NCBI RefSeq assembly: GCF_001447785.1
Contig: NW_015172593.1
Coordinates: forward strand, 236,811 to 300,810
DNA from: Gekko japonicus
Lineage: Eukaryota
Direction: 5' to 3'
Length of the DNA stretch: 64,000 nt
Made by a program: the position numbers and the translations under genes. Of this stretch, positions 6,551 through 58,130 are shown piece after piece. The notes under the pieces were generated by a model. The model did no database searches, was not told where the DNA came from, and saw only the letters and a list, made by a program, of their open reading frames with translations. Within the stretch, counting starts at the first letter, position 1, and each line of letters begins with the position of its first letter.

Positions 6551-6932
6551 CTGCCTAGAGTTGNNNNNNNNNNNNNNNNNNNNNNNNCCCCTCCCCCCCC
6601 CCCCCCAATTCTGAATTCCCTTTCCCTCACCCGGAAAATTGGCCTGTAGTCCATAATTGGGATAAAACCGTCACAGGATGCCATCTTGGATCTTTTATTC
6701 TGAATTTAATTTTTTATTAAGTTGTATATTGAATTTTAATATTTGTATATTTTATGGCATTACGCCCCTTTGTACATCACCCAGAACCCGGCATAAGCTG
6801 GGATAGAGCGATTAATAAATCAGATAAATAAGAATAATGAATAATACAAAAATTCCACCTAGAGTTGCTGGATGCCACCACCAATCCCACCCCTCAGAAA
6901 AGACCCACGAGAAAGACATTCCAGTTCAGCTC

Positions 6933-28535: not shown

Positions 28536-31500
28536 TTTTAGCCCACACACCACTGTCCAGCTGTTTCCTGTGCTGGTGAGTCTCTCAGGCCCCCTTGAAA
28601 ATTAGGTCTCAGTGTTCTGTTCCTAGAATACAACAATACTCCAGAGTGAGAGAAAAGTTTAATAGTGGAACAGTTTCCTCAAGTTCTGTCTCTTTCACCG
28701 CTTTGTCATAATCAAGCGTGACCCAGAAATATAACTTGGGGCAGCTGACTCCCCAGAATGTCCTAGAGACTCACCATCAAAGGGACTAACTTTGAACAGG
28801 AGGGGGTGAGGGGAAGTAAGAGTTGACGTACCAGAGAAGCCTCTTTTCAAAAGTGATGAAAGACTGGTCACTGTTGAGGGTGACTGTTAGACAGCTGCTA
28901 AGGTAACACGGGAGCCCTTCCTGGGCAACCAGGAGCAGATTGGTCATTGACTTGACTGGGAGAAATCCCGGTAGCCCACTGCCTAGAGTGTCTCCCCCAC
29001 AACAGGGCAAGCAAGGAGGAGCATGGGGCACAGTGGCACCTGGCTTTGTCTTGTGGTAGACCCAGCTGTGGCTAGTGAGGAGCGCAGTAGTCACCTACTC
29101 CTCACCATTGCCCTAGATGGGATAGAAAGTCACAGACCCAGTGGTACCTGACTTTGCCCTGACACACTTTGGCCACTGAGGGGAGAGCATGATCGTGCCT
29201 GCTTTCCCTCCAGCCAACCCTTTGGCCCTGGTGGGGCCCTGCTGCAGGGCCATTCTGGCTTCCCAGTCTGTCCCTGTTGACAACCCTAAGTGAAACATGC
29301 CACAAGTGTAATTCCCCCCCCCCCATATGGGCTCTTGCCCNNNNNNNNNNNNNNNNNNNNNNNNNNNNNNNNNNNNNNNNNNNNNNNNNNNNNNNNNNNN
29401 NNNNNNNNNNNNNNNNNNNNNNNNNNNNNNNNNNNNNNNNNNNNNNNNNNNNNNNNNNNNNNNNNNNNNNNNNNNNNNNNNNNNNNNNNNNNNNNNNNNN
29501 NNNNNNNNNNNNNNNNNNNNNNNNNNNNNNNNNNNNNNNNNNNNNNNNNNNNNNNNNNNNNNNNNNNNNNNNNNNNNNNNNNNNNNNNNNNNNNNNNNNN
29601 NNNNNNNNNNNNNNNNNNNNNNNNNNNNNNNNNNNNNNNNNNNNNNNNNNNNNNNNNNNNNNNNNNNNNNNNNNNNNNNNNNNNNNNNNNNNNNNNNNNN
29701 NNNNNNNNNNNNNNNNNNNNNNNNNNNNNNNNNNNNNNNNNNNNNNNNNNNNNNNNNNNNNNNNNNNNNNNNNNNNNNNNNNNNNNNNNNNNNNNNNNNN
29801 NNNNNNNNNNNNNNNNNNNNNNNNNNNNNNNNNNNNNNNNNNNNNNNNNNNNNNNNNNNNNNNNNNNNNNNNNNNNTGCTGGTTCCAAGTTTAAAGATGG
29901 GCAAGGTCAGAGGAACAGAAACAGGGCTCACAAGTTTACCATGTGAGGGGGCGCAAAATGAAAGCCCATTTTATCTCCTGGAAAGCGTGTTTTCCCCCCT
30001 TTCTTTGCACAGACAGATACTGCTTGATTCCAATGGGTGAAGCGTTGTTGCCTTCTTGTACTCTGGCTGATGCAAGCTCTCCTACTTTGGTCAACCCTTC
30101 AGGCTTTGAGTCTCTCACGGTGTTGGGTGTCTCCAAAGTGCTCCTTTCCTCAGGCGAGGGGACAAAGACTTCAGGAAAGTCATCCGGGCAGCACGTGAAG
30201 GAAAAGGTTAAACCCACAGAGGCACCATAGAAAGCCCTAGGGAAGCTGAAGAAGTCCCGCTCATCCTTGGACACCGCATGATCCGCTAGAGGTCTTCCTG
30301 GCATTCCCAAAGCTCTAGGCGTACTTCTAAACGCAACCATCCCTCCTAAGTTTTTAGTCAATTGAAGTTACAGGGGCAGCCGCCTCCGGAAGAAATCAGT
30401 GTGCTGGATGTCTGCTGTGTGGTTTTGCAGAGGTTCTCCAAAGGCTGGTACCAGAGGCAGGGGGACAGCAGCGGTTAACTCAGGAAGGCTCACTGGCGAC
30501 TGTGCTGGGAAGCTCATCCGAAGGGGGAACTGGTGACATCACAACTAATGCTTGGGACTGCCCAGATGTTCTAGCGGGAGCTCTCTCTGGATTTCCTCCT
30601 CTTGCGTGAAGGGCTAGTCAAACAAGGCTTCTCAGGGAAGGAGCGGGAGGAAGAGGGACGTCCCACGAGTACTCAGAGACTCACTGTACACCTGGCAAGA
30701 GCTGGCCCCCTTACGGAAGTGGAGTTTGGGAAGCACGGCCTCAGCTCTGGAGCAGCTACACACCACTTGCACTCTGGCCAAGGCCTTTCCATCTTTGCAG
30801 AAGAGGCAGGGGAGCCTGCAGGGTGCAGCACGGCCTGGGGAGGAACCAATAATAAAGCGTGTGGGCTTAATGGGATGGACCCAGCAAAAGCTGTCAACAT
30901 CAAAAACGACACAGGCAGCCGAGCGGCTTAGACACATGCAGGGAGCAGGAACAGATGTGCGGCAGTCTCCACGATGACGTAAAAGCCCCAAGTCTACTCA
31001 CATTTGCAACACCAAAGGAAGCATGAAGACGAGAGGAGGCTAGCCCTGTTCCAAGCTCACTTGATGGTCGACCCCCACAGCAGACCACAAAGCTAAGCCC
31101 GTAGCAACAACACTCCGCACAGGGTTGGGAGGGAAAGGGGAATTAACATACCCTGCACACCACTTGAAGAGACCTGCCACGTACGACGGTACCCCTGTGG
31201 ACTGAAAGACACACTTCTCAAGCCACAAGCTCGACAGCAAGGAAAACAAGTGACAAATGAGCCAAGTTAAAACCCCATAGAAGGGGGGGGCACAGCAAGG
31301 AATGGTCAACCCTATTGCAGCTTTGCATCCAAAAGTCTTATTCCAAGAGCAGAAGGCAAATTTGCTCACGGAAGGTCTCCGGATTCCCAGGATTCCCTCC
31401 TCCAGCTACAGCCCCTTCTTCCAGGGGCCTAACCCTTCAGAGTAGCTTTCTGGCGGGGATGCAGTGGAATGGGGTGGGAAGTCCCTGTTGTGCAGGTAAG

Positions 31501-32662
31501 GTTGCCGTCCTCCAGGTGGGGCCTGGAGTTCTCCTGGAATTACAAGTGATCTCCAGATTACTGAGATTCGTTCCCCCGAAAAAAATGGCAGATTCGAAGG
31601 GTAGACTATAGAATTATAGTCCCCCCCTCCAAACTTTCCCCTCCCCATCGGCGTCCCCAAATCTCCAGGAATTTCCCACGCTGGAGTTGGCAACCCTATA
31701 TGCAAGCCGGTGCAGTGTCGTGGTTAGCATGCTGCACGGTGATGTAGGAGATTCGCATTCAAATCCCCTATTCCACCATGGGAAGACCACTGGGTGACCT
31801 CGGGCCAGTCACTCGTTCTCAGACTCACGTACTTCACAGTGCTGCCGTTGTGATGAAAATAGAAGGAGGGGAAGAACGATGCTGTAAGCACTGGGGTCTC
31901 CCCAAAGGGAAGGTATAAATAAACAGAAAGGAGAGTTCCCTTGTGATGCTTTGGATACAACTCAACATAAAACAGTGAAATGAAGCAATGTTTTGTAAGA
32001 CCTGTGAGTCTTCGGCAGGGTCTCTTGAACACACACAAAGCTGCCTTATACTGAATCAGACCCATCGGTCCATCAAAGTCAGTACTGTCTACTAAGACTG
32101 GCAGTGGCTCTCCAGGTAGAGGTCTTTCATGTCACCTACTGGTAGATCCTTACTGGCGATGCCAGGGATTGAACCCGGGGCCTTCTGCATGCCAAGCAGA
32201 GGCTCTACTGCTGAGCCATGGCCCTTTAGGTGAAAACCAGAGTGAAGAGGATTCCAAGCATGTTCTGTTGGATTTTACATGCTGAGGGAGTCCTCTGCAG
32301 CTCTTACATCAAAAGTGTGTGTGATGGCGGAGGACAGGAAGGCCTGGCGTGATGTGGTCCATGGGGTCACAAAGAGTCGGACTCGACTGTGCGGCTGAAT
32401 AACAAAAGTTCCTTCTGGGAAGGAGCACACACACACACACTGAAGTCTCTGCATGTCAGAAGCTGCTAGTATTCCCTCTCCTGGAGACTGAGTGATGGGA
32501 GAAAGCTTCACCTGTTGGATTTCTGTCACACAACTGCTCAAGGCACAGGAGTTTCTTAAAAGCAGCAATGTTGTGTAGAGGTTATAGCATAAGATCAGGA
32601 CCTGGGAAACCCAGGTTTGAATCTCTACTCAGCCATTGGTTCACTGGTTAACCTTGAGTCAG

Positions 32663-32915
32663 GGAGCAGAGAGGATGAAGGAGAGCAAGGTGCAGAATAG
32701 AAAATTTATTTAACTCTTGTGTATCCCGATGCATTTCGCTGTAAGTTTAATCAGGGGATCATCTTCAAAAGGCTTCTGTAACTGGAAAACATCTGAAGAA
32801 GCTCCCCTGATGAAGTTTACAGCGAAATGCATCGGGATCCACAAGAGTGAAATACATTTTCTATTCTGCGCCTTGCTCTCCTTCGTCCTCTCACCGGTGC
32901 AGCCCTCATTTTTCC
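32663..32915. mobile_element. Fold-back insertion (probably Penelope-like) with inverted hammerhead motifs, nested in a SINE
   Basis: Arms of about 97 bp (32669-32767 and 32793-32892); flanking duplication taaccttgagtcag / taaccttgagacag. Confidence 0.75.
32803..32837 (+). ncRNA. Minimal type I hammerhead ribozyme motif
   Basis: UCCC-CUGAUGA-aguuuacagc-GAAA-UGCA-UC^-GGGA: both conserved core boxes, stem I UCCC/GGGA, palindromic stem III AUGCAU; stem II is weak. Confidence 0.65.
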
Positions 32916-34943
32916 TAACCTTGAGACAGTCATTTTTTTCCTCAGCTGAACCCTACCTCACAGGGTTGTTGTGAAGGTAAAATAGAGGAGGTAAGAGTGA
33001 TGTATGCGCTAAGCCCCTCAGAAGAAAGTGGGGATAAAATGTATTTTAAAAAATCTGGAAGAATGGGAATCCATTAGGCAATTAGCAACTTAAGCTAAAA
33101 GTGATAAAAGGCCATTTTAGAAAATACATTTGTATTAAGCCATATGAATTCTGGGTAACATATCCCCAACCATGAATGACATCCTCACAGACACACACGT
33201 CTGTCTTCCACTCATGTACTCCCAGTGCGATTGCTCTTTCACACGTTTACGTTTCAGTCCTTGATGAAATATTCTGTAAGTAACCGGTGTAGTGGATTAA
33301 GCGTCAGACTAAGATCCGGGAGAGCTCGTTTCAGATCCCCACTCTGCCATGGAAGCTTGCTGGGTGACCTTGGCCCGCTCACTTTCTCTCAAACTCAACT
33401 GCCTCCAAGAAAGACATTCCCAGGTAAACAGAGCTTGAGGAAGTTCTTGACCCTGCAGCAGAAATGCAGAGCGTTCTTTCCTCTCCCTGCCCAAGAAGTC
33501 TCACAGCCCTGCCCTGTTTTACACACACACACACAAACACACCACACATGGGCTTGGCAACTGTTCAGGCCTGATTCGGGCCATGCCTGTGTGCTGAAGC
33601 ACTAACGACAGCAGAGTAACTAAAAAGGCAGGATGCTGAGGTAGGCAGGGAAGACAGACCACCAGGCAATGACAAGGAAGGAAGGCGGGCAGTGTGTACA
33701 CAGTTTGGCTTACCTCCAGCTAATAGCAGAGGCCATATACGGAGGGCTCTTAAATGGCTGAGAAGGAAGTCTCAGTGCTTTTTTTGACAGAGATAAGAAG
33801 AAATGGGGCCTGAGATAAGAACAGTCCATCTGGTCTCACAGTGGCCCACCAGATGCCCCTGGAAGGCCTACGGGCATGGCACACAAGCCAAAAGCCTCCT
33901 CTTGCTGCTACTGTCCGTCCAGCAACTGGCATTCAGAGGTACACCGCCTCCCAATATGGAGGTCCCATCCAGCCACTGATGGGCCATGAAGTTGTCTAAA
34001 ATCCCCTTTCAAAGCCCATGTAAGCTAGTGCCCATCGCCACATCTCATGGCAGCAAATTCCGCATCGAGAAACATGACAGCATGATGCATTTTCAGCCTG
34101 CCAGTAAATGAACCTGGAGTACAAACCACCACAGGGCATCAGCATGGCGGCACCAGTGGCACTTAGCCTTCCCGATGGCGCGAGAGCCCTTTTCTGGCTA
34201 CTAGCTGTTTTAGGAGATACGTTTTCACACTTTTTCAGATAGGGGTCCCAGCATTAAGTCCAATCTGCAACACGGGTCCTACTATTTAATTTTAAAAAAA
34301 TTAATTTTTGCCAAGTGTATCTCCTTCTGCTTTTTCTATCGCTTATCCTCATTCTCTTTCACACAGAGAAACACTCTCAGCCCCTCACTTCCTTCAAAAC
34401 AAAACCTTTTAAAAGTCAGTATTTGGTGGTGGTGCCACTGGTATGACCCACCATGCACTGGAGGAGTGACACAGATGAGAGTCACAAACCCACAAGCTGA
34501 AGGGCCAGTGGTCTGACGGACCAGCCATGGGAGACCAATACATTAAACTTTCTCCCTGCCCACCATAAAATAGAATAAAAGCATCCCACTCCACCATTGC
34601 TTACTTCAGACTCATGCACGGAAAGGACCCCCTAGCCCTCCTCCAGAATAAGACAGCCCAGGTTCAACCAAGCCTCACTCTCTATCCCCCTGAATAAAGC
34701 CAGACCCCTTTCCCTAGCAACCTTCCCTAGGCTCCCGTGGAAGAAGCTCCTGTCTTCATTCCGCTGTTTTTTCGGCACATCTTCACCCCCCAGAGCCTTT
34801 GTTCTCCTCACTCTGCACGCCCCCAAACCCCATCTGATTTCTTCCCATCGTGCTTACGTCAAACGCAGAGCCATCCTGCCCCCGGGCTCATCCACCCTGC
34901 TTAATGTCCCATCATAGACTCTGGCCGACTTTCTTCAAAGTCC

Positions 34944-38505: not shown

Positions 38506-38675
38506 TTTAACCAGGCAGCCACACCTAAAGCTACCTGAGGGTTGTGCTGGAAGAACACAAGGAAAGGGAAGCACAGCAGCAGAGGGCAAATAAAAGCAGT
38601 CTGGAAGGATGCTGCCTGACTCCCTTTTCAGAATCCCATGCTGGTCTATAAAGCTTGGCAGTCAAGGCCTCTAAC

Positions 38676-39107
38676 CTGTTTGTAGATAAGCTCAAAGCTT
38701 CCTGTGCTGCAGGTGCGGTCGTACTTGCGGTCGATGACCACCCGTAGGGTGTCCTCCTGCACACTGGCGCACAGCCGAGTAGTGACGGCAGTGGAGGCGG
38801 CCATGGTCGGGCTGGCGTTGATCTCAATCAGCCACGGCTGGTAGTTTTCTCCAAAAAGGAAGTCCGCGCCGTACAGCTCGAAGCTGTTTTTGCGGAACTC
38901 AACCAGGTCTTGTGAAGTTTGCATGGCGTGAATGATGGCGGCCTTCATGCCGGGCACGATCACCTTTGACCAGGCATCTGGTGCCCCCACCTGCCGCAAG
39001 TGGACCTGGAACTGCTCTGACGACCACATGTTGTCGGGGGGCAGCTCTGCAGGTTCAGCGAGTTCTCATAGTGCTTCTGGATGGAGTTATTGCAGAGGTG
39101 GATGGAG
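38676..39107 (-). CDS. TTLL3: TTLL3 catalytic-domain exon with an apparent frameshift at about 39051
   Basis: [18 protein letters not shown], then frame change to [14 protein letters not shown]...FELYGADF...[12 protein letters not shown]...FELIYKQ; 432 nt is out of phase with the flanking exons. Confidence 0.92.
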
Positions 39108-39951
39108 CTAGGGGGGGAGAGGAAGACGGGATCAGAACCAAGAGGTGGCCAGTCGGATGCAGTGGTCAACCATCCTGGATTTGAACAGGGGAGATGCAGG
39201 TTCAATCCTTGCTATGATGCTCTCCATCTCTGGTGCACAGGAGTCTCTCATCTCTGCCTGACTTCTTGATGTTCCTCTGCCTGACTCGCTTCTCAGAGAT
39301 CCCATGCCACTGTTCCCATCAGCATCCTCACTGCCATTTTAACAAATCCTGCTTAGCTTCCAAGAGCTGACAAAATCAGGCTAGCCTGGGCTATCCTGGT
39401 CAGAGAGGGTAATACCTATGGCATGCATACAGTACACCTTGTACACAGTAGTATAGCCCACAGCCACTGTCCCTTCATAAAGCACTTTCCTGCACTATTC
39501 TGTTACAGTATGGCCCTATTACTTTTATAGAAATGCCCTCCTGAACAATTTTGTCAACCAAAGGCCCTCCTAAAAAGCTCTGCCCTGCATTTCTTTAGGA
39601 ACTACAGAAGGGGAAGAAGCAGCCCCACTGAGAGCTACACAGAAATTTGTCTCTGTGTTGAAGCACCCCGAACCAGATATTGGCAAATCTTTTTGCATCA
39701 TAACATCTACTCTGTCAGCATCTGTCTAACATTGCAGGCAGATGCCCTTCCCAGACTATTGATTTTAAGATCTGTGGTTCTCTATGTATTCTGGGATGAT
39801 AAGGCAGATAATGCTGCAAGAAGATTTGTACAGAGTTTTAGTGGACTGAGCAGACAATGCAGCACATCTCTGTTTGTCCCTCTCATATGTGTGCAGGCGA
39901 GCATGTGAGCACAGACACACACAGAAGAAAAATAAAACTGGCAAAACTCAC

Positions 39952-40195
39952 GTGTCCAGGTTTCTCAGGGAAAAAGGCTGCGTAGAGAAGCGGATGTAAC
40001 TCTGCCGGTAGAACCAGATGGTAAGTGGGTTCCAGTCGGTTACCAGAAACCACTGGCGCAGGTCAAATTTTGTGCCGAATATGAGCAGGGGTGTCTCGAT
40101 ATATTTCTGCACCACCCACTTGCCATCCTTGACAATCATGGGGTCGCAGTCCACTAGCTTCACGATATCCTCCAAGCGGTCCATACACATTATGC
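39952..40195 (-). CDS. TTLL3: TTLL3 exon
   Basis: [11 protein letters not shown]...[33 protein letters not shown]...[15 protein letters not shown]; ag/gtgagt. Confidence 0.96.
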
Positions 40196-40479
40196 CTGTT
40201 AGAAACTCCGTCATAACACTGTGTGTGCCTTTCCCACCCTGCCTCTGTTCCCAGCTCACCTTGGAGCAGGGCTTTGAAAGCGCTGGCATCTTTCTGCAAG
40301 GCCCAAACTGGATATGCATTCTTCCGGAACTGATGCCTCAGAGATGCTCAGGCATTATATTCCCATGACCCATATATTCCCATGACCCAACTATGGTTCT
40401 CAGGTTGCCACCCCAGCCACCCTGGCAGTGACAAAAGCCAGTTTGATATAGTGATTAAGAGTGCAGACTCTAAACTGGG

Positions 40480-54387: not shown

Positions 54388-55869
54388 NNNNNNNNNNNNN
54401 NNNNNNNNNNNNNNNNNNNNNNNNNNNNNNNNNNNNNNNNNNNNNNNNNNNNNNNNNNNNNNNNNNNNNNNNNNNNNNNNNNNNNNNNNNNNNNNNNNNN
54501 NNNNNNNNNNNNNNNNNNNNNNNNNNNNNNNNNNNNNNNNNNNNNNNNNNNNNNNNNNNNNNNNNNNNNNNNNNNNNNNNNNNNNNNNNNNNNNNNNNNN
54601 NNNNNNNNNNNNNNNNNNNNNNNNNNNNNNNNNNNNNNNNNNNNNNNNNNNNNNNNNNNNNNNNNNNNNNNNNNNNNNNNNNNNNNNNNNNNNNNNNNNN
54701 NNNNNNNNNNNNNNNNNNNNNNNNNNNNNNNNNNNNNNNNNNNNNNNNNNNNNNNNNNNNNNNNNNNNNNNNNNNNNNNNNNNNNNNNNNNNNNNNNNNN
54801 NNNNNNNNNNNNNNNNNNNNNNNNNNNNNNNNNNNNNNNNNNNNNNNNNNNNNNNNNNNNNNNNNNNNNNNNNNNNNNNNNNNNNNNNNNNNNNNNNNNN
54901 NNNNNNNNNNNNNNNNNNNNNNNNNNNNNNNNNNNNNNNNNNNNNNNNNNNNNNNNNNNNNGAACTGAGATGGGCGTACTAAGGATGAGACGGGGGGGGA
55001 CGGGGGACGGACGGACGATGGAGATTGAGAGTCACTAGTCCCAGGACTGGAGATGGCACAGTATTCTGGTGCCATGGGGTGTGGCGCACTTTCCCAGCAT
55101 AAGCACTTACCATCCGGTAAGGGAATCAATTTGCATGGTTGCCACCCCATTGTGCAACTACACTGGCAACAACACCCCAGCGACTCACCTTCCTGCCTCC
55201 GTCTGCTAGTGCCGGGTACACTGGATGGATGGCAGCGAATGGGGCGCAGACATTTGCGTTCAGCCCTGGGGACTGCATCTCCCTCAGACTTCAACCTGCC
55301 AACTGTAGTCAGGTGGGGACAGATCATTAAAAAGGTCAGCGGCCAAAGGATGCCAAATCCATATCAGGGGAGGGTAGAGCTACTGGAGGACATGCGAGAA
55401 AGACACCGTCTGAGCAGGCCTAATCTCTGAGGAGATCCAGGATGGTGCTGTGGTTGAGATGCTGAACTAAAGACTGGGCAGACCCAGTTTCAAATCTCCG
55501 TAGCCACGAAGCCTCCCGGTGAAGCTGCCAACCTCCAGGTGGTGGCTGGAGATCTGGGATGACAACTGATTTCCAGCTCACAGAGATCAGTTCAACTGGA
55601 GAAAATGACCACTCTGGAAGGCTATGTCATTATACCCCAACTGAAGTCTCCATTCCCCAAACCCCACCTCCCAAATCTCCAGGCATTTACCAACCAGGAG
55701 CTGGCATCCCTACTCCCTGGGTTACCTTCAACCAGTCACTCTCTCAGCCCAACACATCCCAGAGGGTTGTTGTGAGGATAAAATGGAGAGGAGAATGGTG
55801 GAAGCTGCCCTGAGCTCCTTGGAGGAAGGGTGAGACAAAACCATATTAAATAAATGCTACCCTCTGCGT

Positions 55870-56840: not shown

Positions 56841-58130
56841 AACCAGAGCACATGGGAACAGGAGGCTTACGCCTCCCCATATACCATCTTCCTACGCTGA
56901 AATGGCCCCGGAGACTCCTTTTGGGGACTCCACATGTACTCATGGAGTACATGCAAGTTTTCACAATGGGGCACCCCCTCAGGGCCATTTCCAATCCAAA
57001 TCAGCCCCCTCCCATGCCTGGGAACTGAATTTCCAGTGGAGAACTTGCAGCTTGCTTCCGATGGTGACCCAGATAGTGACTGAGGACTTTGTATTGTGTT
57101 ATTAGGCCCTCNNNNNNNNNNNNNNNNNNNNNNNNNNNNNNNNNNNNNNNNNNNNNNNNNNNNNNNNNNNNNNNNNNNNNNNNNNNNNNNNNNNNNNNNN
57201 NNNNNNNNNNNNNNNNNNNNNNNNNNNNNNNNNNNNNNNNNNNNTGCCTGAGCACTGGATGATGCCCTTAATAAACTAAGTGATAGTTTTCTTTTAATGG
57301 TATCCCAGGAGGGGCTGCTTGCCTCACCCCACTAAACAGCAAGGCCACACCAGGGGATGTTTAACAGGACTGCAGCTCTATTCCTCTCCACTCTGATCAT
57401 GAAATTAAGCAAAAAAGATGTATTACCTATACCATACCAGAACAATCAGTACTGCAATGCTGGACCACCTCCTGCTGACTCTATTCCCAACCCTAGACAG
57501 ATGCTGGCTCCAAATCACAACCGTCTGCCGAGGTTATGCTGTGTATCAATGCAAGTTTATGTGTAAGAAAACCAAGGATTTTGCCTAGTGTAGAACTGGG
57601 TGCATCTTAGACAGTAAAAGATGTCCAAGTATGGGATGGCCTGGCATCAGATGAGAAGGTTGTGCCCGATGCCATCCAGGTCTGTTTCGGACCTAAAATT
57701 CTACCCACATTTATCATCCTATAAGACACTGACTAGCAGAACTTGCACATCATCTGGCTGGAATCATGATTTATGAACCCCCCTCAACCCCACTCCCTAA
57801 ACTAGGCCAAATCAAGCTCCATGCAGGTGGGGCTGGCGTGTGGATATCAATCCTGGAGACTTCAAGTCCCTGAACAGTTTGGCTGAGAAGAGACCAGGTT
57901 CCCAGATGAAGTTCATTATTACAGCTATAGGAAATGTAAAATACATGTACACTGATCTAATAGAAAACACTGTTTTATCAGCGGTGTGCATGCTTTTTTG
58001 AGTGTGACCGAATGCATTTCACTACTATCACTGTAATCCCTGCAACAGCCTTTTAACAAAGGCCAATATTGTTATCCTCCTTGTTGCACACAGGGAAACT
58101 GAGGCTGAATGCCTTGCAGAAAGACACATA

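What the first reader, a model, noticed from the sequence alone, without database searches (positions are those of the whole stretch)
32649..32929. Fold-back element carrying two oppositely oriented hammerhead ribozyme motifs, one apparently intact
Seen in the sequence: a 253-bp insert (32663-32915) interrupts a SINE and is bounded by a 14-bp duplication (taaccttgagtcag / taaccttgagacag). It is almost entirely one inverted repeat with arms of about 97 bp. The right arm reads UCCC CUGAUGA aguuuacagc GAAA UGCA UC^ GGGA on plus (32803-32837). This is a type I hammerhead layout with both core boxes, stem I, a minimal stem II and a palindromic stem III (AUGCAU), with predicted cleavage after C32833. 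The left arm gives the same motif on minus, but with CUGAUUA (G8 mutated). Established knowledge: Penelope-like retroelement termini carry minimal hammerheads with palindromic stem III that are thought to cleave as dimers, and Penelope insertions often leave inverted termini. Inference: this is a short non-autonomous ribozyme-bearing mobile unit (Penelope- or retrozyme-like). It sits between the convergent 3' ends of RPUSD3 and TTLL3, where read-through RNA could either self-cleave or form a ~100-bp dsRNA hairpin.
Basis: partly seen in the sequence, partly recalled or inferred. Interest (0 to 1): 0.8.

Follow-up and report, generated by a model that had tools for sequence, protein, structure and literature searches.

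The report
Decayed head-to-head Penelope-like retroelement insertion
A 253-base insertion inside a SINE is most likely two short, truncated end-pieces of a Penelope-like jumping gene inserted back to back in one event, each carrying that element's usual small hammerhead motif; it is an ordinary, decaying fossil and not a working ribozyme unit.

Summary
A 253-bp insert (32663-32915) is bounded by a 14-bp duplication (13/14). It is almost entirely one inverted repeat with 108-nt arms, 87% complementary. The right arm carries a complete type I hammerhead core on the plus strand (32803-32837). The left arm carries the same motif with G8U and also G10.1A.

The motif shows the published traits of Penelope-like-element (PLE) minimal hammerheads: an extra base between A9 and G10.1, a G10.1-C11.1 pair, a palindromic helix III and a 4-bp helix I. 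Helix II is only 3 bp, and no Rfam hammerhead model matches.

The anatomy fits a PLE integration event: inverted truncated copies, a variable-length duplication, and a 23-nt tail at one end. The arm ends lie 59-65 and 82 nt past the cut site, against 56 and 90 nt in the Anolis Poseidon element.

It is probably dead. Any transcript folds into a -158 kcal/mol hairpin that sequesters the ribozyme, and the arms have diverged as expected for neutral decay.

First-stage notes list several similar inverted PLE-like hammerhead insertions elsewhere in this genome.

The parts
32649..32662 (.). Left copy of the 14-bp target-site duplication (TAACCTTGAGTCAG), within the interrupted SINE
   Evidence: family D1; sequence
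32663..32668 (-). Six terminal bases of the left arm (GGAGCA) that lie outside the inverted repeat; this is the short end, without the tail
   Evidence: alignment A1
32669..32776 (-). Left arm of the inverted repeat; the element's sense strand here is the minus strand
   Evidence: pair I1 (108 nt, 87%)
32724..32758 (-). Degenerate hammerhead motif with G8U, G10.1A and U10.2C; the cut site would lie between 32728 and 32727 on the minus strand
32777..32784 (.). 8-nt spacer at the centre of the fold-back. The innermost ~18 nt of each arm are poorly matched (6 of the 14 differences), so this is probably the junction of the two 5'-truncated copies
32785..32892 (+). Right arm of the inverted repeat; the element's sense strand here is the plus strand
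   Evidence: pair I1
32803..32837 (+). Minimal type I hammerhead motif with a complete core: helix I 4 bp, extra A between A9 and G10.1, helix II 3 bp with a 3-nt loop, helix III A-UGCA-U (palindrome AUGCAU), cut predicted after C32833
   Evidence: No Rfam hammerhead match
32810..32914 (+). Open frame of 35 codons running from the AUG inside CUGAUGA to the end of the insert. It may be the start of the element's ORF, but the evidence is weak
   Evidence: The chance of such a frame being open is about 0.22. No protein relatives were found
32893..32915 (+). 23-nt extension present only at the right end, read as a one-sided PLE-type 'tail'
   Evidence: compared with PMC8557442 and PMC11167929
32916..32929 (.). 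Right copy of the target-site duplication (TAACCTTGAGACAG)
   Evidence: family D1

Best explanation
The insert is a fossil of a single integration event by a Penelope-like retroelement (PLE). The element's endonuclease made nicks 14 bp apart on the two strands of a SINE. Both exposed 3' ends primed reverse transcription of the element's RNA at its internal start sites, just inside the ORF that follows the pseudo-LTR. One cDNA started at the distal site, giving the right arm with its 23-nt tail. The other started at the proximal site, giving the left arm without the tail. Both cDNAs stopped, or ran off the template, about 10-25 nt upstream of the hammerhead motif, and they were joined head to head. 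Filling the staggered nicks produced the 14-bp duplication. Each arm therefore holds the last few bases of the pseudo-LTR, the element's own minimal hammerhead, and 59-82 nt of downstream sequence. The copy was very probably dead on arrival and has since decayed neutrally, by about 7% per arm. The right-arm core survived by chance, and the left arm lost G8 and G10.1. If RNA is made across the insert, it folds into a ~100-bp hairpin and does not form a hammerhead. Shown here: the anatomy, the motif, the fold and the divergence. Inferred from published PLE biology: the two-strand priming, the two start sites and the dead-on-arrival status.
For: Insertion: the 13/14 duplication sits exactly at the borders of the insert, and the inverted repeat is 108 nt at 87%. 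Motif: it is the only hammerhead-descriptor hit in the 64 kb, against 0.01 expected. [quoted passage not shown] It also has the short 4-bp helix I they describe. The fourth trait, family-wide covariation, could not be tested. The same paper reports pairs of minimal hammerheads 100-700 bp apart on opposite strands, and motifs in turtle and snakes. The layout matches, element by element, the experimentally cleaving hammerhead of the Anolis Poseidon element, read from its consensus: ACCU CUGAGGA U GCCUGC..GUGGGC GAAA CG UC^AGGA. Architecture: PLE insertions are typically 5'-truncated, often carry an inverted 5'-truncated copy, have a tail at one end only, and have duplications of variable length (PMC8557442). 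The purified Anolis PLE protein cuts and extends both DNA strands, and it starts reverse transcription at two internal RNA sites whose spacing is the tail (PMC11167929). In that element the start sites lie about 56 and 90 nt past the hammerhead cut. Here the arm ends lie 59-65 and 82 nt past it. Decay: the K2P distance between arms is 0.142. Differences are no rarer inside the motif (3/35) than outside it (11/73), p = 0.54. Fold: the whole insert is a hairpin at -158.3 kcal/mol, and the hammerhead helices have probability 0 in its ensemble. Unchecked first-stage notes report PLEs with RT/GIY-YIG ORFs and similar inverted insertions elsewhere in this genome.
Against: No sequence homology to any PLE was shown. 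The window holds no RT or GIY-YIG ORF. The 35-residue frame that starts in the motif finds nothing among 1.84 billion representative proteins; a blank from so short a query carries little weight. By eye the arms resemble the Anolis Poseidon consensus only in the core boxes. Helix II is 3 bp with a 3-nt loop, against 6-8 bp in the described PLE motifs. The tail is 23 nt, not 30-40. No Rfam hammerhead model matches. The near-symmetric inner ends of the two arms are not an obvious outcome of two independent truncations.
Confidence: 0.78

Rival explanations
1. The two arms are copies of a short non-autonomous PLE-dependent element (an animal non-LTR retrozyme monomer or similar), not of the terminus of an autonomous PLE. 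The PLE machinery mobilised it in trans and inserted it head to head.
For: Animal retrozymes are reported to derive from PLE pseudo-LTRs. In reptiles their consensus length averages 176 bp and family lengths start at 51 bp (bioRxiv 10.64898/2026.07.22.740005). Both arms end at almost the same inner position, as if a short RNA with a defined 5' end had been copied to its end. No PLE ORF homology was found.
Against: There is no tandem direct repeat here, and tandem repeats define retrozymes. The frame from the AUG in the core stays open to the end of the insert, as at a pseudo-LTR/ORF junction, though this is weak (p about 0.22). Circular RNA could not be examined.
Confidence: 0.15
2. A fold-back DNA transposon or MITE, or a palindromic duplication unrelated to transposition, in which the hammerhead-like string arose by chance.
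For: The element is nearly all inverted repeat. No Rfam hammerhead match. Helix II is marginal. A descriptor this loose should hit by chance about once per 6 Mb, so a scan of many windows will meet chance hits.
Against: The inverted repeat does not reach the ends: 6 nt are unpaired on the left and 23 nt on the right. From established knowledge, a 14-bp duplication fits no DNA-transposon superfamily, which give fixed lengths of 2-11 bp. The chance of the motif falling inside this particular 253-bp insert is about 4e-5. The motif also carries PLE-specific traits that the descriptor did not require: the extra base and G10.1-C11.1. The distances from the cut site to both ends match a characterised PLE.
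Confidence: 0.05
3. A functional host element: a self-cleaving ribozyme acting on read-through transcripts, or a long hairpin kept as a source of small RNAs or as a dsRNA signal between two convergent genes.
For: The right-arm core is complete. The hairpin is very stable. Sub-threshold hairpin-type matches to miRNA precursor families appear (best 37 bits against a gathering score of 68). The insert lies downstream of a TTL-family gene.
Against: The arms differ by 13%, with no sparing of the motif. The hammerhead helices are absent from the ensemble of the whole insert, and even the isolated 35-mer prefers a different hairpin (-10.3 against -2.4 kcal/mol). The minus-strand copy, which is the strand of the TTL gene, has lost G8. 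No RNA holder is on record among the runs. All miRNA matches are far below their thresholds.
Confidence: 0.02

Closest known systems
Minimal hammerhead ribozymes of metazoan Penelope-like elements (Cervera and de la Pena 2014, PMC4209133)
   Same: Type I topology and complete core boxes. One extra nucleotide between A9 and G10.1. A G10.1-C11.1 pair. A 1-bp helix III closed by a palindromic loop (AUGCAU overall). A helix I of 4 bp with no defined loop 1. Occurrence as a pair on opposite strands within 100-700 bp. Reported in reptiles.
   Different: Helix II is 3 bp with a 3-nt loop, against 6-8 bp in the described families. Family consensus and covariation could not be examined here.
Poseidon_Ac (PAc) of Anolis carolinensis, the biochemically studied PLE (Frangieh et al. 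2024, PMC11167929)
   Same: The hammerhead sits at the pseudo-LTR/ORF junction with the same element-by-element layout. The insertion ends lie about 56-65 nt and 82-90 nt past the cut site, and the piece between them forms a one-sided tail. The protein cuts and extends both target strands, which explains a head-to-head double copy. Uncleaved RNA is the template, and here both arms do contain the whole motif.
   Different: No recognisable sequence similarity outside the core boxes, judged by eye against the consensus. The tail is 23 nt against about 34 nt. The ATG lies within CUGAUGA, not at A9. The target is not clearly AT-rich.
[quoted passage not shown] 2021, PMC8557442)
   Same: 5' truncation, an adjacent inverted copy forming an inverted repeat, an extension at one end only, and a target duplication of variable length.
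   Different: There is no full-length or ORF-bearing partner here. Both copies are reduced to about 110-130 nt, so the result is a bare fold-back.
Animal non-LTR retrozymes (Cervera and de la Pena 2020, PMC7229834; Li et al. 2026 preprint)
   Same: Short non-coding units with a type I hammerhead, related to PLE pseudo-LTRs and present in reptiles.
   Different: Retrozymes are head-to-tail tandem repeats that yield circular RNAs. This is a single inverted pair with no direct repeat.
Twin-priming inversions of LINE-1 (Ostertag and Kazazian 2001; from my own knowledge)
   Same: Both 3' ends at a staggered break prime cDNA, giving an inverted structure flanked by a duplication.
   Different: In L1 the two segments are different parts of one RNA. 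Here both arms cover the same segment, so two templates, or two repeats of one multimeric RNA, were copied.

Membership tests
Hammerhead ribozyme, type I | Conserved core C3-U4-G5-A6-N7-G8-A9, G12-A13-A14, A15.1-U16.1, H17, with helix I open-ended | tested here: met
   Right arm, plus strand, 32803-32837. The left arm fails this test (G8U).
Hammerhead ribozyme, type I | Match to a curated covariance model (the Rfam hammerhead families) | tested here: not met
   No hammerhead family is listed at gathering score or at E<=10, on 1 kb or on 61 nt. The published PLE motifs also needed a relaxed descriptor, so this does not exclude the minimal class.
Hammerhead ribozyme, type I | A stable helix II and a fold that can compete with alternatives | tested here: inconclusive
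   Helix II is G-C, U-G, U-A with a 3-nt loop. The hammerhead pairing scores -2.4 kcal/mol, against -10.3 for an alternative hairpin (CCUGAUG/CAUCGGG). Two copies do not form the intermolecular helix III in cofolding. Nearest-neighbour energies ignore the core's tertiary contacts.
Hammerhead ribozyme, type I | Site-specific self-cleavage | not testable with these tools
   Needs in vitro transcription. The published PLE motifs cleave poorly without dimer constructs or the element's protein.
PLE minimal hammerhead (Cervera and de la Pena 2014) | [quoted passage not shown] | tested here: met
   A32814 in the right arm (hit only with extra=1).
PLE minimal hammerhead (Cervera and de la Pena 2014) | A G10.1-C11.1 pair | tested here: met
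   G32815-C32823 in the right arm. In the left arm it is lost (G10.1A).
PLE minimal hammerhead (Cervera and de la Pena 2014) | Palindromic positions 15.2-16.2 and loop 3, allowing a dimeric helix III | tested here: met
   A-UGCA-U, palindrome AUGCAU, identical in both arms.
PLE minimal hammerhead (Cervera and de la Pena 2014) | A longer than usual helix II (6-8 bp) | tested here: not met
   Only 10 nt lie between CUGAUGA and GAAA, so at most 3 bp can form.
PLE minimal hammerhead (Cervera and de la Pena 2014) | Membership of a multi-copy consensus family with compensatory changes | not testable with these tools
Collection scans were blank.
Penelope-like element insertion | Sequence continuity or homology with an RT plus GIY-YIG ORF | tested here: inconclusive
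   No such ORF in the window. The 35-residue frame found no relatives, but the query is too short for a blank to count.
Penelope-like element insertion | 5'-truncated copy with an adjacent inverted 5'-truncated copy | tested here: met
   Two arms head to head, each ending 10-25 nt upstream of the motif. Definition.
Penelope-like element insertion | A tail extension at one end only, corresponding to two reverse-transcription start sites | tested here: met
   23 nt at the right end against 6 nt at the left. This is shorter than the published 30-40 nt. Ends lie 59-65 and 82 nt past the cut, against 56 and 90 nt in PAc.
Penelope-like element insertion | Target-site duplication of variable length from staggered nicks | tested here: met
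   14 bp, 13/14 identical.
Animal non-LTR retrozyme | Head-to-tail tandem repeats of the hammerhead unit | tested here: not met
   The only direct repeats in 32400-33200 are the 14-bp duplication and short chance pairs.
Animal non-LTR retrozyme | Expression as small circular RNA | not testable with these tools
DNA transposon / MITE / Foldback | Terminal inverted repeats reaching both ends, and a duplication of superfamily-specific fixed length | tested here: not met
   Unpaired ends of 6 and 23 nt. A 14-bp duplication fits no superfamily I know of (own knowledge).

The most novel reading that the evidence does not exclude
Bare head-to-head mini-insertions like this one, if common in this genome, would be natural footprints of concerted priming on both target strands by a dimeric PLE ribonucleoprotein using its two internal start sites. 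That mechanism has so far been seen only in vitro for one Anolis element. Separately, their ~100-bp hairpins, which cover the element's hammerhead and the start of its ORF, could feed small-RNA silencing of active PLEs.
Probability: 0.1. Interest if true: 0.45.

Novelty: new member of a known kind. Interest (0 to 1): 0.18.

Why it matters
It matters little for its own sake. Minimal hammerheads in PLE termini, inverted truncated PLE copies and one-sided tails are all described, and reptile genomes hold thousands of such motifs. The modest value is as a clean, datable example. Its two ends fall close to the two reverse-transcription start sites mapped in vitro for an Anolis PLE, and its head-to-head form matches that enzyme's ability to extend both strands. 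A genome-wide census of such fossils could test that model in vivo. For annotation, the insert should be masked as PLE-derived repeat and not listed as a ribozyme gene.

Tried and rejected
1. Rfam, three searches. No hammerhead family matched. The only matches over the insert are sub-threshold miRNA-precursor models that reflect a generic long hairpin, and I rejected them as evidence of a miRNA.

2. Read laying on 32400-33200 with four runs of the same organism, meant to measure copy number, variants and an empty-site allele. In my scripts they were replaced by N and left unanalysed.

3. Exact-pattern scans of the metagenome (twice), prokaryotic-genome and viral collections with the motif. All returned 0 hits, as expected for an animal repeat.

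4. The big protein search with the 35-residue frame. It returned 0 hits. I used it instead of the word search because the word search's length filter would have excluded full-length PLE proteins.

5. Pfam on 20 open frames around the insert. This found only TTL-domain exons and neither a PLE ORF nor a pseudouridine synthase domain, so RPUSD3 remains unverified.

6. The search of earlier findings by sequence was blank.

7. Alignment or protein search with the Poseidon_Ac consensus from the paper's supplement was left out. The comparison was made by eye only.

8. An orthologous empty-site test through neighbouring proteins was considered and dropped. It would need a joined multi-exon protein model, which is not to be built.

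9. I considered whether the similarity between the insert's last 10 nt and the 12 nt just after the right duplication could extend the duplication. I rejected this because the order of the pieces does not fit a longer duplication.
Full report
**What is there.**
- The repeat finder reports the direct repeat TAACCTTGAGTCAG / TAACCTTGAGACAG at 32649-32662 and 32916-32929 (13/14).
- It also reports one inverted repeat, 32669-32776 against 32785-32892: 108 nt, 87% complementary, 8 nt between the arms.
- The 253 bp between the direct repeats occur nowhere else in the window.
- As RNA they fold into a single hairpin of -158.3 kcal/mol, z = -19.8 against shuffles.
- The flanks read as one continuous tRNA-derived SINE of the squamate type. 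That identification rests on my memory of such consensus sequences. No second copy exists in the window to prove continuity.
- The inverted repeat does not reach the ends. Six bases at the left (32663-32668) and 23 at the right (32893-32915) lie outside it.

**The motif.**
- On the plus strand, 32803-32837 reads UCCC CUGAUGA A GUU-UAC-AGC GAAA UGCA UC^GGGA. This is a type I hammerhead layout with every core position present and a predicted cut after C32833.
It also has G10.1A and U10.2C.
- A descriptor I wrote (core boxes, helix I of at least 4 bp, helix II of at least 3 bp, optional base after A9, palindromic helix III) finds only this site in the 64 kb on either strand. That stays true when relaxed.
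- The descriptor expects 0.01 hits per window in 300 simulated sequences. This equals about one chance hit per 6 Mb, or about 4e-5 for this particular insert. I set the limits after seeing the motif, so the figure flatters it.
- No Rfam hammerhead family matches, at gathering score or at E<=10, even when only 61 nt are given. The sub-threshold miRNA-family matches over the insert reflect only a long hairpin.

**Comparison with published PLE hammerheads.** Cervera and de la Pena (PMC4209133) describe minimal hammerheads in the pseudo-LTRs of Penelope-like elements, including in reptiles.
[quoted passage not shown] They also describe a short helix I of 4-5 bp. The right arm has all of these.
- They also report pairs of such motifs 100-700 bp apart on opposite strands.
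- One trait is not met. Helix II is 6-8 bp in their families and 3 bp here.
- The consensus of the Anolis Poseidon element read across its tandem junction gives ACCU CUGAGGA U GCCUGC..GUGGGC GAAA CG UC^AGGA. This is the same layout element by element. That motif has been shown to cleave only with the element's protein present.

**The insertion anatomy.**
- Craig et al. (PMC8557442) summarise PLE insertions as follows. They are strongly 5'-truncated and often have an inverted 5'-truncated copy alongside. They carry a 30-40-bp tail at one end only and a duplication of variable length.
- Frangieh et al. (PMC11167929) show that the purified Anolis protein cuts and extends both DNA strands, unlike R2 or L1. 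Reverse transcription starts at two internal RNA sites, near +85 and +119 of the ORF, and the tail is the piece between them. The hammerhead cut is at +29. Uncleaved RNA is the template.
- In that element, insertion ends therefore lie about 56 and 90 nt past the cut. Here the left arm ends 59-65 nt past its cut site and the right arm 82 nt past it. The difference between the two is the 17-23-nt one-sided extension.
- Both arms contain the whole motif, so the template was not cleaved.
- A 14-bp duplication with one 3' end on each strand abutting an arm's 3' end is the geometry expected if both nicked strands primed cDNA.
- I conclude that two truncated copies of a PLE terminus were laid down head to head in one event. 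The steps of that event are inferred, not shown.

**State and likely activity.**
- The arms differ at 14 of 108 positions (K2P 0.142, about 0.07 per arm). Six of the differences fall in the innermost 18 nt, which is probably junction sequence.
- The motif is not spared: 3 of 35 positions differ inside it against 11 of 73 outside, p = 0.54. The duplication differs at 1 of 14.
- This is neutral decay. At an assumed 1-2e-9 substitutions per site per year it suggests tens of millions of years, a rough figure only.
- In the ensemble of the whole insert, the pairs of hammerhead helices I and II have probability 0. The isolated 35-mer prefers another hairpin (-10.3 against -2.4 kcal/mol). Two copies do not form the intermolecular helix III in cofolding.
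- Each strand carries only one sense motif, so the dimeric form that such motifs are thought to need cannot form in cis.
- The minus strand, which is the strand of the neighbouring TTL-family gene, carries the copy without G8.
- By analogy with the Anolis element, whose template RNA must extend to +172, copies that end at the start sites cannot be templates again. Calling this a mobile unit is therefore not supported.

**What could not be shown.**
- No homology to a PLE coding region was found. The window has no RT or GIY-YIG ORF.
- The frame from the AUG inside CUGAUGA is open for 35 codons to the end of the insert. That has a chance of about 0.22, and the peptide finds nothing among 1.84 billion representatives.
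- Scans of the public collections were blank.
- The Poseidon_Ac sequence from the paper has no reference here, so it was compared by eye only.
- RPUSD3 was not verified.

**Earlier notes of this scan.** They list 48 first-stage notes in this genome that hold the words hammerhead, Penelope and ribozyme. Several describe inverted, duplication-flanked insertions. One followed-up note concerns a PLE with an RT/GIY-YIG ORF. These are unchecked leads. They agree that PLEs and such fossils are common in this genome.

**Verdict.** The Penelope-like origin is well supported by motif traits and anatomy, though not by homology. The ribozyme-unit reading is not supported. This is an ordinary member of a known kind.

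Noticed in passing
window 32906-32915 and 32930-32941: The last 10 nt of the insert (TCATTTTTCC) resemble the 12 nt that follow the right copy of the duplication (TCATTTTTTTCC); see family D3. The order of the pieces does not fit a longer duplication. It may be chance in T-rich sequence, or microhomology used at priming.
   Followed up: partly
window 32806-32836: Within the motif, CCUGAUG can pair with CAUCGGG. This gives a 7-bp alternative hairpin that is more stable than the hammerhead pairing in nearest-neighbour terms.
   Followed up: partly
window 32154-32223 (-): This is the only Rfam match in the window at gathering score: tRNA, 46.5 bits. ARAGORN reports no tRNA gene there. It looks like the head of another tRNA-derived SINE in the opposite orientation.
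   Followed up: no
window 32320-32400: This stretch reads like the 3' end of a Bov-B-type LINE, judged from memory of that consensus. With the SINE type and the presence of PLEs, it suggests a squamate reptile. The organism is coded in the run table.
   Followed up: no
window 38646-39029 (-) and 39948-40319 (-): Two open frames carry parts of the tubulin-tyrosine ligase domain (Pfam PF03133, E 3e-28 and 2e-29). A TTLL-type gene therefore runs on the minus strand, with its 3' end towards the insert. A first-stage note flags a frameshift at 39030-39070, which I did not examine.
   Followed up: partly
window 6564-6587, 29341-29876, 54388-54961, 57112-57244: Runs of N. They were left as they are. 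Several long ORFs listed around 29.1-30.0 kb and 54.3-55.3 kb merely run across them.
   Followed up: no
window 32427-32440: A short (CA)n microsatellite about 200 bp upstream of the SINE.
   Followed up: no
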